A DNA stretch of 64,000 nt from Octopus bimaculoides (Eukaryota): the NCBI RefSeq assembly GCF_001194135.2, contig NC_068993.1, positions 10,425,005 to 10,489,004 on the forward strand. The letters are read 5' to 3'. A program made the translations under genes and the position numbers. Below the pieces are notes generated by a model. It saw only the letters and a list, made by a program, of their open reading frames with translations. It had not been told where the DNA came from and searched no databases. Every line of letters begins with the position of its first letter. The stretch's first letter is position 1. Shown one piece after another: positions 884-54,332 of the stretch.

Positions 884-1263
884 TTCTTTTACTCTTTTAT
901 TCTTTTACTCGTTTCAGACATTTGACTGCAGCCATGCTGGAGCACCGCCTTTAGTCGAACAAATCGACCCGAGGACTTATTCTTTGTAAGCTTAGTACTT
1001 ATTCTATCAGTCTCTTTTACTGAACTGCTAAGTTACGAGGACGTAAACACACCAGCATTGGTTGTCAAGCAATGGTGGGGGAGAAATATGGACACACACA
1101 CATATATATACGATGGTTTCCATCTACCAAATCCACTCACAAAGCTTTGGTCGGCCCGAGGCTATAGTAGAAGACACTTGCCCAAGGTGCCACGCAGTAG
1201 GACTGAACCTTGAACCATGTGGTTGGTTATCAGGCTACTTACCACACAGCCACTCCTGCGCCT
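884..1263 (-). mobile_element. tRNA-headed SINE, family A (my label), near full length
   Basis: The reverse complement starts AGGCGCAGGAGTGGCTGTGTGG (A-box-like) and GGTTCAAGGTTCAGTCC (B-box-like). It has an internal (CA/TA)n segment and a (GAGTAAAA)-type tail. More than 10 copies occur in the window. Confidence 0.85.
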
Positions 1264-2166: not shown

Positions 2167-2229
<63 letters not shown>

Positions 2230-2522
2230 NNNNNNNNNNNNNNNNNNNNNNNNNNNNNNNNNNNNNNNNNNNNNNNNNNNNNNNNNNNNNNNNNNNNNNN
2301 NNNNNNNNNNNNNNNNNNNNNNNNNNNNNNNNNNNNNNNNNNNNNNNNNNNNNNNNNNNNNNNNNNNNNNNNNNNNNNNNNNNNNNNNNNNNNNNNNNNN
2401 NNNNNNNNNNNNNNNNNNNNNNNNNNNNNNNNNNNNNNNNNNNNNNNNNNNNNNNNNNNNNNNNNNNNNNNNNNNNNNNNNNNNNNNNNNNNNNNNNNNN
2501 NNNNNNNNNNNNNNNNNNNNNN
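2167..2522. repeat. (GA)n microsatellite followed by a 293-N assembly gap (2230-2522)
   Basis: Seen directly. Other gaps: 14938-14960, 19179-19188, and 23862-24790 (929 N, also preceded by (GA)n). Confidence 0.95.
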
Positions 2523-2683
2523 TGTGCATGTAAGAACTTTTATGACAGATAATTAGCTTGGTAATCGTTTGTGAAAGGTTGCTCAGTGTTTTAGGTCATG
2601 CGATACATGAAAATAACCTTACCTCTCATTTAATATGTCAACTCGGATTTGAAGGCACAGCATGTATCTGGAGGGAAAGAAAA

Positions 2684-2684
2684 C

Positions 2685-2736
<52 letters not shown>

Positions 2737-3528
2737 GTAAGAACAAAAATTTCTAACACAGACACAAGGCCACAATTTTTTTTTCAATCCAGTCGATGCT
2801 TGGATCAGGAGGATAAAATTTCACTTGGAATGCAAATTCCCAAGGAACATCTAAAAAAAGAAATAGAATGAGACAAGGGTTAGAAGAAAACTGTAAAACA
2901 ATAGTAACTGCATTTCCCAGTAAAACAGATGAAGCAGTTTGCATCTACATCTAACAAATTTGTAGACTATCTCCTCTCATCAAAGTATCAACAATTTTAG
3001 CTATAACTAATGTATCCAACTGACCGTTACACATAGTGTCCTGAGGACAAAGAACTTGAAAAGTACGCAACTGGTACTTAACCCTGGTAAAATGGGAGGC
3101 AAAACTGACCTGGCAAAATTTGAACTCAGAATGTAAATGGGGCATGACTAAACACAACAAAGTAATTTGTTGTCTGTCATTTTACAGAATCTGTCAATCC
3201 ATAATGAAGACAATGGAAAGTAAAATAATTAAATGATTACCATTTAATTCAGCTCTCTAGCACTACAAAAATAATAACAATAATAATGATAATAATCCTT
3301 TCTACTAAAGGCACAAGGCCTGAAATTTTGCGGGAGGGGACTAGTCGATTACATCAACCCCAGTGTTTCACAGGTACTTAATTTATCGACCCCGAAAGGA
3401 TGAAAGGCAAAGTTGACCTCAGTGGGATTTGAACTCAGAACATAAAGACAGGTGAAATACCACTAAGCATTTCATCCAACGTGCTAATAATTCTGCCAGC
3501 TCACCATCTTAATATCATCACCATCATC

Positions 3529-3585
<57 letters not shown>

Positions 3586-3795
3586 CCTTTCTACTATAGG
3601 CACAAGGTCTGAAATTTGGGGAGAGGGGGCCAGTTGATTAGATTGATTCCAGTATGCAACTGGTACTTAATTTATTGACTCTGAAAGGATGAAAGATAAA
3701 ATCAACCTTCTTGGAATTTGAACTCAGAATGTAAAGATGGATAGAATGCCACTAAAGCATTTTGCCCAGCGTTTTAACTGTTCTGCCAGCTCGCC

Positions 3796-3848
<53 letters not shown>

Positions 3849-4050
3849 CCTTTCTACTATTGGCACAAGGCCTGAAATGTTGGGGGTGGCGGGCTACTTC
3901 ATTATAGTGACCCTAATGCTTGGCTTGACAGGCACTTACTTTATCAGCCCTGAAAGGATGAAAGGCAAAGTCTACTGTGGGAGAAATTGAACACAGAACA
4001 TAGAAATGAACAAAATGCCATACAGCATTTTGTCCAGCTTGCTGCCTTTG
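2684..4050 (-). mobile_element. Cluster of four head-to-tail family B SINEs (~2748-3140 interrupted, 3295-3510, 3586-3796, 3849-4043) separated by (AAT)n arrays
   Basis: Each unit contains ccttt(c)tacta..ggcacaagg..., gaaaggatgaaaggcaaagt, tttgaactcagaa and ttctgccagctc. (AAT)n arrays lie at 2684-2735, 3531-3585 and 3797-3848. Confidence 0.85.
2801..3062 (-). pseudogene. Partial duplicate of the 76-nt exon: acceptor, first 50 exonic nt and ~210 nt of upstream intron, with no donor
   Basis: 2801-3062 aligns to 4287-4548 with 4 differences by eye (one extra A in an A-run, G/A, T/C, one missing G). It translates as [16 protein letters not shown], then runs into SINE sequence and a stop at 2753-2755. 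Confidence 0.85.
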
Positions 4051-4260
4051 GTTTCAAATTTTGACATTAGGCCAGCTAAGTTCAGCCAAAAATTCAACTC
4101 TGAGTTCTATACTGTGGCATATGTTGGGGCAGGTGACAAACAGTTGGATGAGTTCATTGCTTATCACATTATTTCTACAAATATTGAGTTGATGAAGGCA
4201 AAATACAATTTATTTATTGTTACAGTGGCAAAAATGAGCATTGCTTGAAAAATTACATAC

Positions 4261-4336
4261 CTTGTAAGATCTTCTCGAAGTAAGGATGGATCAGGAGGAT
4301 AAAATTTCACTTGGAATGCAAATTCCCAAGGAACAT
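4261..4336 (-). CDS. EPB41: Protein 4.1-family coding exon, 76 nt, phase 1 to 2: (N)[24 protein letters not shown](R)
   Basis: tatttcttttttag|AT GTT CCT TGG ... CTT ACA AG|gtatgt. It matches the protein 4.1 motif [25 protein letters not shown] and lies inside track ORF 4164..4361. Confidence 0.95.
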
Positions 4337-4612
4337 CTAAAAAAGAAATAGAATGAGACAAGGGTTAAAAGAAAACTGTAAAACAATAGTAACTGCATTC
4401 CCCAGTAAAACAGATGAAGCAGTTTGCATCTACATCTAACAAATTTGTAGACTATCTCCTCTCATCAAAGTATCAACAATTTTAGCTATAACTAATGTAT
4501 CCAACTGACCGTTACACATAGGTGTCCTGAGGACAAAGAACTTGAAAAATTGTTGCTGCTTCATTTACCAAATAACCAATCCATGGTGAGAAAAAAAAAA
4601 AGTGACTTGATT

Positions 4613-4987
4613 CTCTTTTGCTTGTTTCAGCCCTTGGATTGCAACCATGCTGGGGTACCACCTTTTAAGGGTTTGGTCAAAGAAACAGACCCCAGTTCTT
4701 ATTTTTTAAGCCTAGTACTTATCCTCATGGTCACTTTTGCTGAACCACAAGTTACAAGGAGGTAAACAAACCAACACTGGTCATCAAGGGATGGTGGACA
4801 CACACACATATATACATACATATATACATACAAGATGGGCATCTACATAGATTTTGCCAAATTCACTCACAAGGAATTAGCTAACCTGGAGCCATGGTAG
4901 AAGACACTTGCCTAAGGTGCCATGCAGTGGGACTGAACCTGAAACAATGTGGTTACCAAGAAAACTTCTTAACTACATAGCTATGCC
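4613..4987 (-). mobile_element. Diverged family A SINE
   Basis: Collinear with 884-1263 (gtagaagacacttgcc.aaggtgccatgcagtgggactgaacc). Confidence 0.7.
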
Positions 4988-5122
4988 CTGTGTCCATGGA
5001 GGAACACAGAACTAACTAGAACAAAAAGGGACAGTTTTGTCACTGTGATAGAAAGTGAGTTGTTGTTTTTCCCAATGTAACCCTGGGTCAAGCAGACCGA
5101 TGGTCAAAAGCATTTCAGTTCT

Positions 5123-5339
5123 TTTCTACTCTAGGCACAAGACTCTAAATTTGGGGGGAGGAGGCCAGTTGGTTAGATCGACCTCAGTACGCAACTGGTA
5201 CTTAATTTATCGAGTACCTGAAAGGATGAAAGGCAAAGTCGACCTCGGCGAAATTTGAACTCAAAACGTAAAGACAGACAAAATACTGCTGAGCATTTTG
5301 CCCGTTGTGCTAACGTTCCTGCCAGCTCACCACTTTAAG
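5123..5339 (-). mobile_element. Family B SINE with a 13-bp target-site duplication, nested in an older repeat
   Basis: GCATTTCAGTTCT at 5110-5122 and 5340-5352. The flanks join into the older repeat also seen at ~41100-41290. Confidence 0.85.
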
Positions 5340-6013
5340 GCATTTCAGTTCTGACCAGCATGTCTGGTATATTAGCCAATGATATTTTCTAAGACAGTAA
5401 GGTGTAATTTAAGAGAACTTGCTTGTTATTTCTAGCAGGATGAGTAACTATACATAGGCTTCCTTCTAAGTTTTAAACTGAAGTAGGCAACAGTAATTAG
5501 AAAATGGCAAATTTGTTCTGAGGACTAAAATTTAGAAACTAGTATCCTGATAAGCAGGTGAAGAAACTTGTTTGAAATTAAATATTTGATTAACCAATTT
5601 ATCTGATATCTCTTAAATATCTCCTTCTCATCTTTAAAACTGAGACAAAAGCTATGTGCCAAAATTCTTAGGACATGCTAATATAAAGACACAATATTCA
5701 CAGCTGAATATAGTTTTCTGTATACTATTGACTTAGTTCATCCAACATTTTGCCTGCTCTGATACAGGGAGATAATACTGGTCCCTGACAACACATTTGT
5801 GACAGTATGTGCACTACACTTGTGTGCAAGAGACTGACAAACAAGCATCTCTGTTGAGAGAGAGAAAAAGAGAGAGCAATATCTTTGTGCCCTTCCAGGG
5901 TCTCAGAAGTAGTTAAGTATTTATTTGAATTCAGTAACATTTTAACATAACATTTTTCAGTCACATTTAGCTTAAATGACATCAGACCACCCACTCACAC
6001 ACAGGAAGGGTAC

Positions 6014-14852: not shown

Positions 14853-14960
14853 TGGACTCCTCATTCGCATAATCACAGAACCCTGGAGCTATCCATAGCA
14901 TTTACTCAGCATTACCTGACACCTTTGGGTCTTATTGNNNNNNNNNNNNNNNNNNNNNNN

Positions 14961-18228: not shown

Positions 18229-18277
18229 TTTTATCTTTAATCTGCTTCGAAATTCTCTTTTCCAATGAAAGCCATTG
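18229..18277 (-). CDS. EPB41: Protein 4.1-family coding exon, 49 nt, phase 0 to 1: QWLSLEKRISKQIKDK
   Basis: ttttctatttcag|CAA TGG CTT ... GAT AAA A|gtaagt. It matches the FERM xWLxxxKxIxKQ motif, and its phases join both neighbouring exons without a frameshift. Confidence 0.93.
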
Positions 18278-18600: not shown

Positions 18601-18681
<81 letters not shown>

Positions 18682-18835
18682 GGGCTTCTTCCAGTTTCTG
18701 TCAACCAAATCCACTCACAAGGCTTTGGTCAGCCCGGGCCTATAGTAGAAGACACTTGCCCAAGGTGCCACGCAGTGGGACTGAACCTGGAACCATGTGG
18801 TTGGTAAGCAAGCTACTTACCACACAGCCACTCCT
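18401..18835 (-). mobile_element. Family A SINE with an expanded internal (TA)n, 124 bp from the 49-nt exon acceptor
   Basis: Collinear with 44251-44655. Confidence 0.85.
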
Positions 18836-23861: not shown

Positions 23862-24961
23862 NNNNNNNNNNNNNNNNNNNNNNNNNNNNNNNNNNNNNNN
23901 NNNNNNNNNNNNNNNNNNNNNNNNNNNNNNNNNNNNNNNNNNNNNNNNNNNNNNNNNNNNNNNNNNNNNNNNNNNNNNNNNNNNNNNNNNNNNNNNNNNN
24001 NNNNNNNNNNNNNNNNNNNNNNNNNNNNNNNNNNNNNNNNNNNNNNNNNNNNNNNNNNNNNNNNNNNNNNNNNNNNNNNNNNNNNNNNNNNNNNNNNNNN
24101 NNNNNNNNNNNNNNNNNNNNNNNNNNNNNNNNNNNNNNNNNNNNNNNNNNNNNNNNNNNNNNNNNNNNNNNNNNNNNNNNNNNNNNNNNNNNNNNNNNNN
24201 NNNNNNNNNNNNNNNNNNNNNNNNNNNNNNNNNNNNNNNNNNNNNNNNNNNNNNNNNNNNNNNNNNNNNNNNNNNNNNNNNNNNNNNNNNNNNNNNNNNN
24301 NNNNNNNNNNNNNNNNNNNNNNNNNNNNNNNNNNNNNNNNNNNNNNNNNNNNNNNNNNNNNNNNNNNNNNNNNNNNNNNNNNNNNNNNNNNNNNNNNNNN
24401 NNNNNNNNNNNNNNNNNNNNNNNNNNNNNNNNNNNNNNNNNNNNNNNNNNNNNNNNNNNNNNNNNNNNNNNNNNNNNNNNNNNNNNNNNNNNNNNNNNNN
24501 NNNNNNNNNNNNNNNNNNNNNNNNNNNNNNNNNNNNNNNNNNNNNNNNNNNNNNNNNNNNNNNNNNNNNNNNNNNNNNNNNNNNNNNNNNNNNNNNNNNN
24601 NNNNNNNNNNNNNNNNNNNNNNNNNNNNNNNNNNNNNNNNNNNNNNNNNNNNNNNNNNNNNNNNNNNNNNNNNNNNNNNNNNNNNNNNNNNNNNNNNNNN
24701 NNNNNNNNNNNNNNNNNNNNNNNNNNNNNNNNNNNNNNNNNNNNNNNNNNNNNNNNNNNNNNNNNNNNNNNNNNNNNNNNNNNNNNNNNNNAAGTCTGTG
24801 TCAACAACCTGGTAAATGGGTGTCGGTTGTAGTTAAGTGGACGAGCAGAAGGTAATAAAAAAAAAAAGGGGCAATGTCATTCACCCTGTCCAGATTCTGC
24901 ATAACCTTACTATTGCATTTCTCACAAAGTACTACAATAAACTACTACTACTACTACTACT

Positions 24962-33913: not shown

Positions 33914-36312
33914 ATATACCCACATACACACAATCACTTTAACATCCACTTTTCCATGCTTGTATGAGATTTCATTGATGCAAACTTTCTACAGCCAGAT
34001 ACCCTTCCTGTTGCCAACCCTGATCAGTTTCAAAGCCAGGTAATATTTCCCCATGGGTAGACATGTTTTCCCAGAAGATTGGAAATGAAGTACACCACTT
34101 ATATGACAGAGACACTCATTTACAGCGATCATATGCTGTCAAGACAAGGAGACATCAACTTACAAACAACTACATGGTCAGGAAGCAACAAGCCTCTCAA
34201 CCACACAGCTACACGACAGTGGCAGGAGTCCTAGATGAACAAGTGTGTGCGTGTGTCTGTTTACACAAGCCCTCCCTCAGATCCATGAGGGAGATAAAAA
34301 TGGGATGGTACTACACTCATGTCCATGCCAATGTGAGTATCGTGAATTAGAGAAAGAAGCCACAGTCGAGAATTAAAATGGATCAACTGACTTCATCAGG
34401 AATTTTCCTTTACAACTTATTTTAAGAGACAAAACCAAATGCACAAGTCAACTTTTGAGACTATATATGGTTGCCTGACCTACTAGAAATAGCTAACTCT
34501 CCCCTAAATCACACTACCATATTAAACAAAATGACATCAGTTGATGTAGTCACAAATACACTCAAAATAAAGTATGAGATGATCACATCTGGAAAAATCT
34601 TTATAGATAAAATTGCTCGATCAGAGTTGCTATAAGAACAAACAAAAAAGTGACAAAAACAACATTATTATTATTATTATTATTATTATGAACTCAAATC
34701 ACATAGGGAATATGAAGTTGTTAATATCTGTTACCTTGATTAGAAGTTTAAATCAAGATGGAAGCACCGAAATATTGTACCACTTATTCCCCACATGAGA
34801 TCATCCCAAGCAGTTCTTTCATCATCATCATGGTATTAACATCTACTTTTTCATGCCTGCATGGGTCAGAAGGGATTTGCTGGGGCAGATTTTCTATGGG
34901 TGGATGCCCTTCCTGTCACCAACTCTCACCTGTTTCCAAGTAAGGTAATATTTCCCTATGGCTGGGCATGTTTTCACAGAAGATTGGAAATGAAGGATAC
35001 CAACTGTATGACAATGGTACTCGTTTACAACAATCATACGATGCCAAGACAAGGAGCCCAATAACTCGCGCACGCACACACACACACGACAAGCTTCTTT
35101 AAGTTTCCATCTAATAAATCCAGGCTTTGCTTAGCGCAGGGCTATAGTAGAAGACACCTGTCCAAGGAGTCACTCTGTGAGACTGGATCCAGAACGAAGT
35201 GGTAGGGAAGCAAGCTTCTTACCATACAGCCATGGCTGCACCTACAGTTTTGATTAAAAAGTTTATTTTAAGAAAAAAAAAAAAAAAAAAAAAATTGTAT
35301 AACTATCAATTCTAATCATTAGAAACTAATTGAAAGATCACAAACATAAGCAACCTGTAGTGACGGTGGTGGTAGAAGTAGTAGGAACAACAGTAACAAG
35401 TGGAATAGTAATTTTATTTTTATAAAAAAAACTGTATGTACAGGTAGATAAAGGTAAACTCACAACAACTACTTACTTAAATAGTGTTAAATTTCATTTT
35501 TAACCTTTCACGGGAAAAATAAGGATTGTCAGCTTGTAGCAGAATAAATCAGTGAGTCATCATGACCTTTGAACATTGACCAAGTTTATATAACTTCAGT
35601 CAACAAGTAAACATCTAACTTGGCCACTTCTTCTGCTAGAAACAGCAGTCATGTCTCTCTCTCAAATTACACCCTATGGTCTTAATTAAAAATACAAACA
35701 CACATGTGGTCCAAGGTATTTAAAGAACGAATGTCTGTAATGTCTAACCTGGTGTTAAACAGCATGAAACAAAACTGGACAGTAAAATGGCTCAATTGTG
35801 TCATAATGTATATAAACCATTGACAAGAAAGATACAATGGTTTTCACCTGAGAATATATATAGAAAGGAGACAAGAATAATTCTGGCAACAGCTAGCCGG
35901 AACACCAGGTGCATTTTGGCCTTCTTGGGCCTTGTCTATCATGTGTATTCAGTCACATGCCTAGTTGGGATTTATTAGCTTTGACATACTGGAAATAGTA
36001 GTTCATTTATTGATATTTATTGATGGTAAGCTGAATGAAACATCTGGGGTGCACAACTGAAACAGCATTAATTTAAAGTTGCCGTCTCTGTATCGCAACA
36101 CTCTGCACTCCAGTGCATCATCAACCAGTGTGAACGAGTTTAAGAGTGTACAGTGTGGTACCAAACCAAAGTAAAATATACTATGGTTTATATCCGATGG
36201 TAGTACTGATATTAGATCTGATGTAAGCTAACTGCCGTAGCTATCACAACATCAAAAGGACTGCTTAAGGAAAAAAAAAATATTGCAAAACAATTGCCAA
36301 TTATATAGCACC

Positions 36313-36474
36313 TACTACACTCTCGGAGTGGTTGGCATTAGGAAGGGCATCCAGCTGTAGAAACTCTGCCAAATCAGATTGGAGCCTGGTGTAGCCATCT
36401 GGTTTCACCAGTCCTCAGTCAAATCGTCCAACCCATGCTAGCATGGAAAGCGGACGTTAAATGACGACGACGAC
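36313..36474 (+). mobile_element. Family D LINE 3' end, young copy
   Basis: ctacactctcggagtggttggcattaggaagggcatccagctgtag...ggacgttaaatgacgacgacgac. Confidence 0.8.
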
Positions 36475-44250: not shown

Positions 44251-44654
44251 TATTCTTTTACTCTTTTACTTGTTTCAGTCATTTGACTGCGGCCATGCTG
44301 CAGCACCGCCTTTAGTCGAGCAAATCGACCCCAGGACTTATTCTTTGGAAGCCTAGTACTTATTCTATCGGTCTCTTTTGCCGAACCGCTAAGTTACGGG
44401 GACGTAAACACACCACCATCAGTTGTCAAGCGATGTTGGGGGACAAACACAGACACAAACATACACACACACACACGCATATATATATATATGACGGGCT
44501 TCTTTCAGTTTCCGTCTACCAAATCCACTCACAAGGCTTTGGTTGATCCGAGGCTATAGTAGAAGACACATGCCCAAGGTGCCACGCAGTGGGACTGAAC
44601 CTGGAACCATGTGGTTGGTAAACAAGCTACTTACCACACAGCCACTCCTGCGCC

Positions 44655-51366: not shown

Positions 51367-51477
51367 TTTAATATCATTATTTTCCTTATCAATGTAGGTA
51401 AGGCCAAAGTAATCCTTTTCAAGAAGATTCAAATGATCACATACTTTACTAAACAATTCCTGGCCTGAAGCGTTTTT
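51367..51477 (-). CDS. EPB41: Protein 4.1/coracle-family FERM gene, coding exon (F1 lobe), 111 nt, phase 0 to 0: [37 protein letters not shown]
   Basis: Minus strand reads ttttcttcttcag|AAA AAC GCT ... ATT AAA|gtaagt. It is open for 37 codons and contains the band-4.1 signature [22 protein letters not shown]. The ORF track misses it because it is under 60 aa. The symbol is family-level; paralog identity is not resolved. Confidence 0.95.
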
Positions 51478-53964: not shown

Positions 53965-54332
53965 TTAGGCACATAAGATGCACCATTTTGAGCGTGGCTG
54001 TTGCCAGTACCACCTGACTGGCCTCCGTAGGATTTTCGAGCGAGATTGTTGCCAGTGCCCCTAGACTGGCTTGTGCGGGTGGCACATAAAAGACACCATT
54101 TCGAGCGTGGCCGTTGCCAGTATCGCCTGACTGGCCTTCGTGCAGGTGACACGTAAAAGCACCTACTACACTCTCTGAGTGGTTGGCGTTAGGAAGGGCA
54201 TCCAGCTGTAGAAACTCTGCCAAATTTAGATTGGAGCCTGGTGTTGCCATCCGGTTTCACCAGTCCTCAGTCAAGTCGTCCAACCCATGCTAGCATGAAA
54301 AGCGGACGTTAAACGATGATGATGATGATGAT
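53965..54332 (+). mobile_element. Family D LINE 3'UTR with three hairpin-bearing repeat units and a (GAT)n tail
   Basis: Repeat units at 53985-54140. The young tail at 54164-54332 is near-identical to 36313-36474. Confidence 0.75.

What the first reader, a model, noticed from the sequence alone, without database searches (positions are those of the whole stretch)
2748..4548. Half of a FERM exon with its splice acceptor was copied into the middle of a SINE 1.5 kb downstream
Seen: 2801-3062 is a ~98% copy (4 differences in 262 bp) of 4287-4548. It carries ~210 nt of intron, the intact acceptor (AG at 2852-2851) and 50 of the 76 exonic nt, but not the donor. It is embedded in a family B SINE: the left flank ends ...ccagtcgatgct and the right flank resumes gtacgcaactggtactt, whereas the intact copy at 5123-5339 reads ccagttggttagatcgacctcagtacgcaactgg, so ~12 SINE nt were replaced. 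Inference: this looks like a recent templated insertion at a double-strand break, copied from a nearby locus. It creates a competing acceptor. Splicing the 49-nt exon to it would give ...[32 protein letters not shown] (stop 2753-2755), a truncated or NMD isoform. It is a snapshot of exon duplication in progress. Caveat: it lies ~280 bp from an N-gap.
Basis: partly seen in the sequence, partly recalled or inferred. Interest (0 to 1): 0.7.

Follow-up and report, generated by a model that had tools for sequence, protein, structure and literature searches.

The report
Copied splice acceptor patch inside SINE
A 262-base piece of a band-4.1 (FERM) gene, made of an intron end, its splice acceptor and two thirds of an exon, was copied about 1.5 kb downstream into an old SINE in the next intron, which looks like an ordinary break-repair scar that happens to leave an untested decoy splice site.

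Summary
Window 2801-3062 and 4287-4548 are the same 262 nt apart from 2 transitions and 2 one-base indels (BLAST E about 1e-133), and the window holds only these two copies. The gene is on the minus strand and is band-4.1/EPB41-like (Pfam FERM_N 3.5e-17; PDB EPB41L3 1.6e-31). The copy carries 212 intronic nt including the acceptor AG, plus the first 50 of 76 exonic nt.

It lies inside a very degenerate SINE whose two flanks stay in register. Thirteen SINE bases are missing. There is no target-site duplication and no poly(A). One junction has 1 nt of microhomology and the other has 3 unexplained bases (GCT). These are the marks of a templated patch at a repaired double-strand break, and the insert is far younger than the SINE.

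That exon's donor would close a 228-nt pseudo-exon. The likelier aberrant junction is therefore 4261>2850, which shifts the frame to a stop at 2807-2805.

"Exon duplication in progress" is not supported. Use of the decoy acceptor is untested. No cephalopod reads or assemblies were reachable, so an assembly artefact is unlikely but not excluded.

The parts
2801..3062 (-). Inserted copy. In the gene's sense it holds 212 nt of intron 3' end (3062-2851, AG at 2852-2851) followed by the first 50 nt of the 76-nt FERM exon (2850-2801).
   Evidence: 98.5% identical to 4287-4548; two copies only in the window
2798..2800 (.). GCT, three bases at the left junction explained by neither the SINE consensus nor the source. 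They may be non-templated filler, or part of a short second templated stretch (ATGCTTGG).
4287..4548 (-). Source segment, continuous on both sides with the native intron and the rest of the exon.
4261..4336 (-). Native 76-nt exon (e4) of a band-4.1-like gene, encoding (N)[24 protein letters not shown](R). Acceptor AG is at 4338-4337 and donor GT at 4260-4259.
2623..2667 (-). Next coding exon (e5, 45 nt), encoding YMLCLQIRVDILNE. Acceptor AG is at 2669-2668 and donor GT at 2622-2621.
18229..18277 (-). Upstream 49-nt exon (e3), encoding QWLSLEKRISKQIKDK.
51367..51477 (-). 111-nt FERM_N exon (e2), encoding [37 protein letters not shown].
2750..2797 (-). 3' part (gene sense) of the host SINE-like element, ending at ...CCAGTCGAT on the + strand.
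3063..3215 (-). 5' part (gene sense) of the host SINE-like element, resuming at GTACGCAACTGGTACTT on the + strand, in register with the family.
2683..2735 (-). (ATT)n tail of the host SINE. It ends 13 nt upstream of the AG of exon e5's acceptor.
3916..3923 (+). ATGCTTGG in the neighbouring SINE, identical to the 8 bases spanning the left junction (2796-2803). It is a possible short second template, but the support is weak.
   Evidence: 5 matches in the window against 2.6 expected

Best explanation
This is a real germline insertion that arose long after the host SINE. A double-strand break or collapsed fork occurred inside an old SINE in the intron between exons e4 and e5 of a band-4.1-like gene. 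It was repaired by copying 262 nt from a template 1.2-1.5 kb away on the same strand of the same chromosome. About 13 SINE bases were lost and the ends were sealed by end joining, with 1 nt of microhomology at one junction and 3 extra bases at the other. The template was most likely DNA, copied by a local template switch or an aborted synthesis-dependent repair of the MMBIR/FoSTeS/SDSA type. A nascent pre-mRNA template is the lesser alternative. The patch carries a complete copy of a constitutive 3' splice site (branch region, polypyrimidine tract, AG) and 50 exonic nt. It now sits 183 nt upstream of the true acceptor of e5. If used, it would give a 228-nt pseudo-exon (2850-2623) with a premature stop, so the product would be an NMD-prone, non-functional isoform. 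Shown: the duplication, the junction anatomy, the gene and exon structure, and the relative ages. Inferred: the repair pathway, DNA versus RNA template, and any splicing effect.
For: The duplication is far beyond chance and has only two copies. The direction is fixed because the source is continuous with the remaining 26 nt of an exon whose translation matches EPB41L3/4.1R across the exon (E 1.6e-31; Pfam FERM_N), while the copy interrupts a SINE whose flanks align in register to nine other copies with 13 bases missing. There is no target-site duplication, no poly(A) and no terminal inverted repeats. Homology ends abruptly, with 1 nt (A) shared at the right junction and GCT unexplained at the left. 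Those are the features listed for class 2 templated sequence insertions, namely microdeletion, microhomology and non-templated nucleotides without TSD or poly(A) (PMC5110952). The host SINE is 65% identical to the family consensus in the window, against 73-89% for the other copies. The insert differs from its source by 0.8% substitutions, so the insert is much younger than the SINE. Two independent breakpoints fall within 13 nt of one another in the same SINE copy, and the copy has 4 private differences. Both facts are hard to obtain from a chimeric or collapsed assembly. The acceptor context of the copy is identical to the native one except T7 instead of T6 in the pyrimidine tract, and the only good donor downstream is that of e5.
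Against: No read-level or cross-assembly evidence was obtainable. The protein and contig collections returned nothing from this organism. The copy is 279 nt from an N-gap in what looks like a short-read scaffold assembly. Microhomology at the junctions is minimal, so no particular repair pathway is demonstrated. A perfect decoy acceptor so close upstream of a 45-nt constitutive exon of an essential cytoskeletal gene should be deleterious if used. That raises the prior for either a rare polymorphism or an artefact.
Confidence: 0.7

Rival explanations
1. Assembly artefact: reads from 4287-4548 were wrongly placed a second time during contig extension or gap closing next to the N-gap, and the real sequence is an uninterrupted SINE.
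For: The copy is 279 nt from the gap 2230-2522. The gaps in this window abut microsatellites, as is typical of short-read scaffolds. No independent data could be reached.
Against: The copy does not reach the contig end; unique sequence, including exon e5, lies between it and the gap. Both junctions fall in one SINE copy, in register and 13 nt apart, with at most 1-4 nt of shared sequence, far too little for a k-mer or overlap mis-join. The copy has 4 private differences from the source, so distinct reads must exist. False duplications normally sit on either side of a gap, and nothing left of the gap matches.
Confidence: 0.1
2. RNA-templated patch: a fragment of the gene's own unspliced pre-mRNA was reverse-transcribed, or used directly, to bridge the break. 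This is the class 2 TSIP route proposed for human cells.
For: The insert is in the sense orientation of a transcribed gene and spans an intron-exon boundary, as nascent RNA would. The junction features equal those of class 2 TSIPs, for which an RNA origin is proposed.
Against: The donor lies only 1.2-1.5 kb away in cis, whereas RNA-derived patches are described as coming from distant regions of the genome. Nothing in the insert (no splicing, no poly(A), no editing-type changes) marks an RNA stage. Local DNA template switching explains the proximity more simply.
Confidence: 0.15
3. Reverse-transcriptase template switch at the birth of the SINE copy: during target-primed reverse transcription the enzyme jumped from SINE RNA to host pre-mRNA and back, giving a chimeric SINE.
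For: The SINE, the insert and the gene all have the same (minus) orientation.
Against: The host SINE is the most degenerate copy in the window, 65% identical to the consensus with 22 gap columns. The insert is 99.2% identical to its source at aligned bases. The two parts cannot be the same age.
Confidence: 0.02
4. Tandem duplication of a 1486-nt unit (3063-4548) followed by exact deletion of the first 1224 nt, or an equivalent two-step rearrangement.
For: The two copies are direct repeats 1486 nt apart.
Against: It needs two events with coincident boundaries, and it does not explain the 13-nt SINE loss plus GCT. There is no trace of a second copy of 3063-4286.
Confidence: 0.03

Closest known systems
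Class 2 templated sequence insertion polymorphisms (TSIPs; Onozawa et al., reviewed in PMC5110952)
   Same: A stretch copied from elsewhere in the genome patches a break. There is no target-site duplication and no poly(A). The junctions show microdeletion of the target, microhomology and a few non-templated bases. The event is heritable.
   Different: The donor here is 1.2-1.5 kb away in cis rather than at a distant locus. An RNA intermediate is not indicated. Polymorphism status is unknown.
Replication-based template switching (FoSTeS/MMBIR templated insertions; e.g. PMC8421209)
   Same: A nearby template on the same chromosome in direct orientation, an insertion combined with a small deletion, and a possible chain of short microhomologies (AT, TGG, A) if the ATGCTTGG stretch at 3916-3923 served as an intermediate template.
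   Different: Microhomology is minimal (0-3 nt) and only one template is certain. The MMBIR insertions described in that paper are mostly short and often complex.
Polymerase theta-mediated end joining with templated inserts (PMC7165422; Drosophila SD-MMEJ, PMC2943611)
   Same: Error-prone end joining that leaves a deletion plus copied sequence.
   Different: From general knowledge, TMEJ inserts are usually a few to a few tens of nt, copied from within tens of nt of the break. This one is 262 nt from more than 1 kb away.
Tandem exon duplication giving mutually exclusive or repeated exons
   Same: Exonic sequence with its acceptor reappears in the neighbouring intron in the same orientation.
   Different: Only 50 of 76 exonic nt were copied, the donor is missing, and every frame through the copy hits a stop. 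It is a decoy 3' splice site or pseudo-exon, not a duplicated exon.

Membership tests
Class 2 templated sequence insertion (break-repair patch) | No target-site duplication flanking the insert | tested here: met
   The flanks CCAGTCGATGCT / GTACGCAACTGG share nothing; 13 SINE bases are lost instead.
Class 2 templated sequence insertion (break-repair patch) | No poly(A) tract or polyadenylation signal at the insert's end | tested here: met
   The insert ends are TGGATC... and ...GAACTTGAAAA, and the four A are templated by the source.
Class 2 templated sequence insertion (break-repair patch) | End-joining marks: microdeletion, microhomology, non-templated bases | tested here: met
   13-nt deletion, 1-nt (A) overlap at 3062/3063, and GCT at 2798-2800.
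Class 2 templated sequence insertion (break-repair patch) | Template from a distant region, derived from RNA | tested here: not met
   The template is 1.2-1.5 kb away in cis. An RNA origin is not testable from the sequence.
Class 2 templated sequence insertion (break-repair patch) | Presence/absence polymorphism among individuals | not testable with these tools
   No reads or other assemblies of this organism are in the collections.
MMBIR/FoSTeS templated insertion | Microhomology at every template switch | tested here: inconclusive
   1 nt at the right junction. At the left junction there is 0 nt, or 2+3 nt if ATGCTTGG (3916-3923) was an intermediate template, but that 8-mer is not rarer than chance.
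MMBIR/FoSTeS templated insertion | Template close by on the same chromosome | tested here: met
   The copies are 1486 nt apart, start to start, in direct orientation.
LINE-mediated retro-insertion (class 1 TSIP / retro-copy) | Target-site duplication, poly(A) tail, insertion at a T-rich nick site | tested here: not met
   None of the three is present.
Tandem exon duplication | Whole exon with both splice sites duplicated and reading frame kept | tested here: not met
   The donor and 26 exonic nt are absent. Stops occur at 2807-2805 (after e4) or 2755-2753 (after e3).
Band 4.1 / FERM-domain gene | Significant match to the FERM N-terminal lobe and to solved 4.1-family FERM domains across the spliced exons | tested here: met
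   Pfam PF09379 3.5e-17, 62.5 bits against a cut-off of 22.7. PDB 2he7 EPB41L3 1.6e-31 and 1gg3 4.1R 1.3e-29, collinear over residues 2-93.
tRNA-derived SINE (host element) | Many dispersed copies of about 215 nt with a simple-repeat tail | tested here: met
   At least 10 copies in the 64-kb window, several followed by (ATT)n in element sense.
tRNA-derived SINE (host element) | tRNA-like head with polymerase III A and B boxes | tested here: inconclusive
   Read by eye, the minus-strand consensus has GCTTAGTGG and GAGTTCAAATTCC about 30 nt apart. ARAGORN and Rfam find no tRNA.

The most novel reading that the evidence does not exclude
The patch was copied from the gene's own nascent pre-mRNA, that is, transcript-templated break repair in cis in an animal germline. 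The resulting decoy acceptor is actually used as a poison pseudo-exon that tunes down band-4.1 expression in this lineage.
Probability: 0.05. Interest if true: 0.55.

Novelty: new member of a known kind. Interest (0 to 1): 0.25.

Why it matters
The locus is a clean, datable example of a templated break-repair insertion in an invertebrate germline, and both junctions can be read because the target is a repeat with a known consensus. By accident it set up a natural splicing experiment. An exact copy of a constitutive 3' splice site lies 183 nt upstream of the acceptor of a 45-nt exon in an essential cytoskeletal gene. RNA-seq across it would show how strongly exon context, rather than the acceptor itself, decides splice-site choice. 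It does not reveal a new mechanism and is not a step towards a new exon.

Tried and rejected
1. I looked for independent copies of the locus in public data. A protein search with the 42-aa spliced peptide found no candidate. An exact look-up of ten window ORFs, including the two that span the junctions (2753-2944 minus, 2951-3160 minus), found none in the collection. A 50-nt exact scan of the metagenome contigs found nothing. A search with the 94-aa spliced peptide found only distant FERM proteins of 59% identity or less over most of the query (up to 72% in short partial matches) and no cephalopod protein. Cross-assembly and read-level checks were therefore not possible. I ran no further search on junction ORFs because the prior of success was very low.

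2. I asked whether the 262 nt is itself a repeat. It has only two copies in the window and one end is conserved coding sequence, so this was rejected.

3. Homologous recombination between SINEs as the cause was rejected. The source segment is not flanked by SINE sequence at either boundary.

4. A transposon-type capture was rejected. There are no terminal inverted repeats and no target-site duplication.

5. I looked for a donor inside or just after the copy. Only weak GT sites exist, the best being CAA|GTGAAA, which also occurs unused in the native exon. The pseudo-exon would have to use the e5 donor.

6. ARAGORN and Rfam runs on the SINEs and on the whole window gave no tRNA and no family at gathering score. 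The sub-threshold CrcZ and mir-4012 matches fall in microsatellites and are chance.

7. A literature search for rules on which of two duplicated acceptors is chosen returned nothing usable.

Full report
**The observation**

The sequence at 2200-5500 was read directly. A local alignment and BLAST show that 2801-3062 and 4287-4548 are 262 nt each. They differ by two transitions (2883 G / 4368 A; 2915 T / 4400 C), one extra A in a homopolymer of the copy (A7 against A6) and one G present only in the source (4521). Identity is 98.5% and E is about 1e-133. No third copy exists in the 64-kb window, and the pair is the strongest hit in a self-BLAST of the window. Homology ends abruptly on both sides.

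**The gene**

The gene lies on the minus strand.

| Exon | Coordinates (minus strand) | Length |
|---|---|---|
| e2 | 51477-51367 | 111 nt |
| e3 | 18277-18229 | 49 nt |
| e4 | 4336-4261 | 76 nt |
| e5 | 2667-2623 | 45 nt |

All four have AG acceptors and GTAAG/GTATG donors. Spliced together they read [93 protein letters not shown].

This peptide matches Pfam FERM_N (3.5e-17). It also aligns collinearly over residues 2-93 to solved FERM domains of band 4.1-like protein 3 (2he7, 1.6e-31) and 4.1R (1gg3, 1.3e-29). The gene is therefore a band-4.1/EPB41-like gene, and the 76-nt exon is a genuine conserved coding exon.

**What was copied, and where it went**

In gene sense the copy holds the last 212 nt of the intron upstream of e4, including the polypyrimidine tract and AG (2852-2851). 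It then holds the first 50 of the 76 nt of e4 (2850-2801). The last 26 exonic nt and the donor were not copied.

The source is continuous with the rest of the exon and intron. The copy interrupts a SINE-like repeat. An alignment of the joined flanks with nine other copies of that repeat from the window shows both flanks in register...CCAGTCGAT, then GCT, then the 262 nt, then GTACGCAACTGGTACTT.... The 13 bases that the family has between these points are missing (TAGATCGACCTCA in the copy at 5120-5340). The direction of copying is thus settled as 4287-4548 to 2801-3062.

**Junction anatomy and mechanism**

- There is no target-site duplication, no poly(A) and no inverted termini.
- At the right junction one base (A) could come from either partner.
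- At the left junction three bases (GCT) come from neither partner.
- The net change is 265 nt gained and 13 nt lost.

This is the signature listed for class 2 templated sequence insertions: microdeletion, microhomology and non-templated bases, without TSD or poly(A). Those insertions are interpreted as patches at repaired double-strand breaks (PMC5110952).

The case differs from those insertions in that the template is only 1.2-1.5 kb away, on the same strand and in direct orientation. That fits local DNA copying better than capture of a random RNA, for example template switching or aborted synthesis-dependent repair of the MMBIR/FoSTeS kind (PMC8421209).

The 8 bases across the left junction (ATGCTTGG, 2796-2803) recur at 3916-3923 in the neighbouring SINE, between target and source. 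That would allow a chain of switches using AT, TGG and A microhomologies with no untemplated base. However, the 8-mer occurs 5 times in the window against 2.6 expected, so this stays a weak suggestion.

I put the sub-mechanisms at roughly 0.55 for DNA-templated local copying and 0.15 for an RNA patch from the gene's own pre-mRNA. The sequence alone cannot separate them.

**Relative ages**

The host SINE is the most decayed copy in the window. It is 65% identical to the window consensus with 22 gap columns, against 73-89% for the other copies. The insert differs from its source by 2 substitutions in about 260 nt. The insertion is therefore much younger than the SINE. This excludes a chimera formed by reverse-transcriptase template switching when the SINE inserted. 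With an assumed, unmeasured neutral rate of a few 1e-9 per site per year, the event would be of the order of a million years old.

**Artefact or real?**

No reads or other assemblies of this organism could be reached, so this rests on internal evidence.

Against an artefact:
- The copy does not touch the contig end. Unique sequence, including exon e5, lies between it and the gap.
- The two breakpoints fall 13 nt apart in one SINE copy and keep its register.
- The junctions share at most 1-4 nt, too little for a false overlap.
- The copy has four private differences.
- Nothing left of the gap duplicates anything right of it.

For an artefact: the copy is close to a gap in what looks like a short-read scaffold, and a perfect decoy acceptor in an essential gene should be selected against. 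I estimate about 0.1 for an artefact.

**Consequences for splicing (inferred, untested)**

The intron between e4 and e5 is 1593 nt, of which 265 nt are the insert. The copied acceptor is identical to the native one except for T7 instead of T6 in the pyrimidine tract. It sits 183 nt upstream of the true acceptor of e5.

No credible donor lies within or just after the copy, so the first good donor downstream is that of e5. Use of the decoy would create a 228-nt pseudo-exon (2850-2623).

- After e4 (junction 4261>2850) the frame shifts to ...[19 protein letters not shown], with TGA at 2807-2805.

The first outcome is the more natural one, because e4 itself is untouched. Either product has a premature stop well upstream of the last junction and would be expected to be degraded.

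The copy is thus a potential decoy 3' splice site. It is not a duplicated exon in the making, because it lacks the donor and a third of the exon and has no open frame.

**Comparison with what is known, and novelty**

Templated patches at breaks, replication-based template switches and polymerase-theta scars are all well described. This locus is a new example, not a new kind. Its appeal is that the SINE consensus gives the empty site, so both junctions can be read exactly, and that the patch happens to carry a full splice acceptor.

The organism was not verified.

**Verdict**

Interest is low to moderate (0.25).

Noticed in passing
window 2623-2667 (minus): A 45-nt coding exon of the band-4.1-like gene (YMLCLQIRVDILNE) lies only 100 nt from the N-gap 2230-2522. 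Further FERM exons were not found in 1-2229, so they lie in the gap or outside the window.
   Followed up: partly
window 2683-4043: The e4-e5 intron is built almost wholly from four same-orientation copies of one SINE-like repeat (2750-3215, 3296-3512, 3585-3797, 3848-4043). Each has an (ATT)n run after it in element sense, as if successive copies had landed in or next to earlier tails.
   Followed up: partly
window 2668-2735: The (ATT)n tail of the host SINE ends 13 nt upstream of the AG of exon e5's acceptor. The branch point and part of the pyrimidine tract of a constitutive exon must therefore lie in SINE-derived sequence.
   Followed up: no
window 2796-2803 and 3916-3923: ATGCTTGG spans the left insertion junction and recurs in the neighbouring SINE between target and source. 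It could be a short second template, but the 8-mer is not rarer than chance (5 matches against 2.6 expected).
   Followed up: yes
window 2200-2229, 14938-14960, 23862-24791: The N-gaps abut (GA)n/(CT)n microsatellites and have varied sizes (293, 23, 10 and 930 nt). That is typical of a short-read scaffold assembly breaking at dinucleotide repeats.
   Followed up: no
window 1127-1224, 4857-4954, 1816-1945, 36307-36461, 54158-54329, 18665-18835, 44479-44649: A second interspersed repeat family (core ...GAAGACACTTGCCCAAGGTGCCACGCAGTGGGACTGAACC...) has several copies at 80-99% identity. One pair (1829-1945 against 36464-36348) is 99% identical.
   Followed up: no
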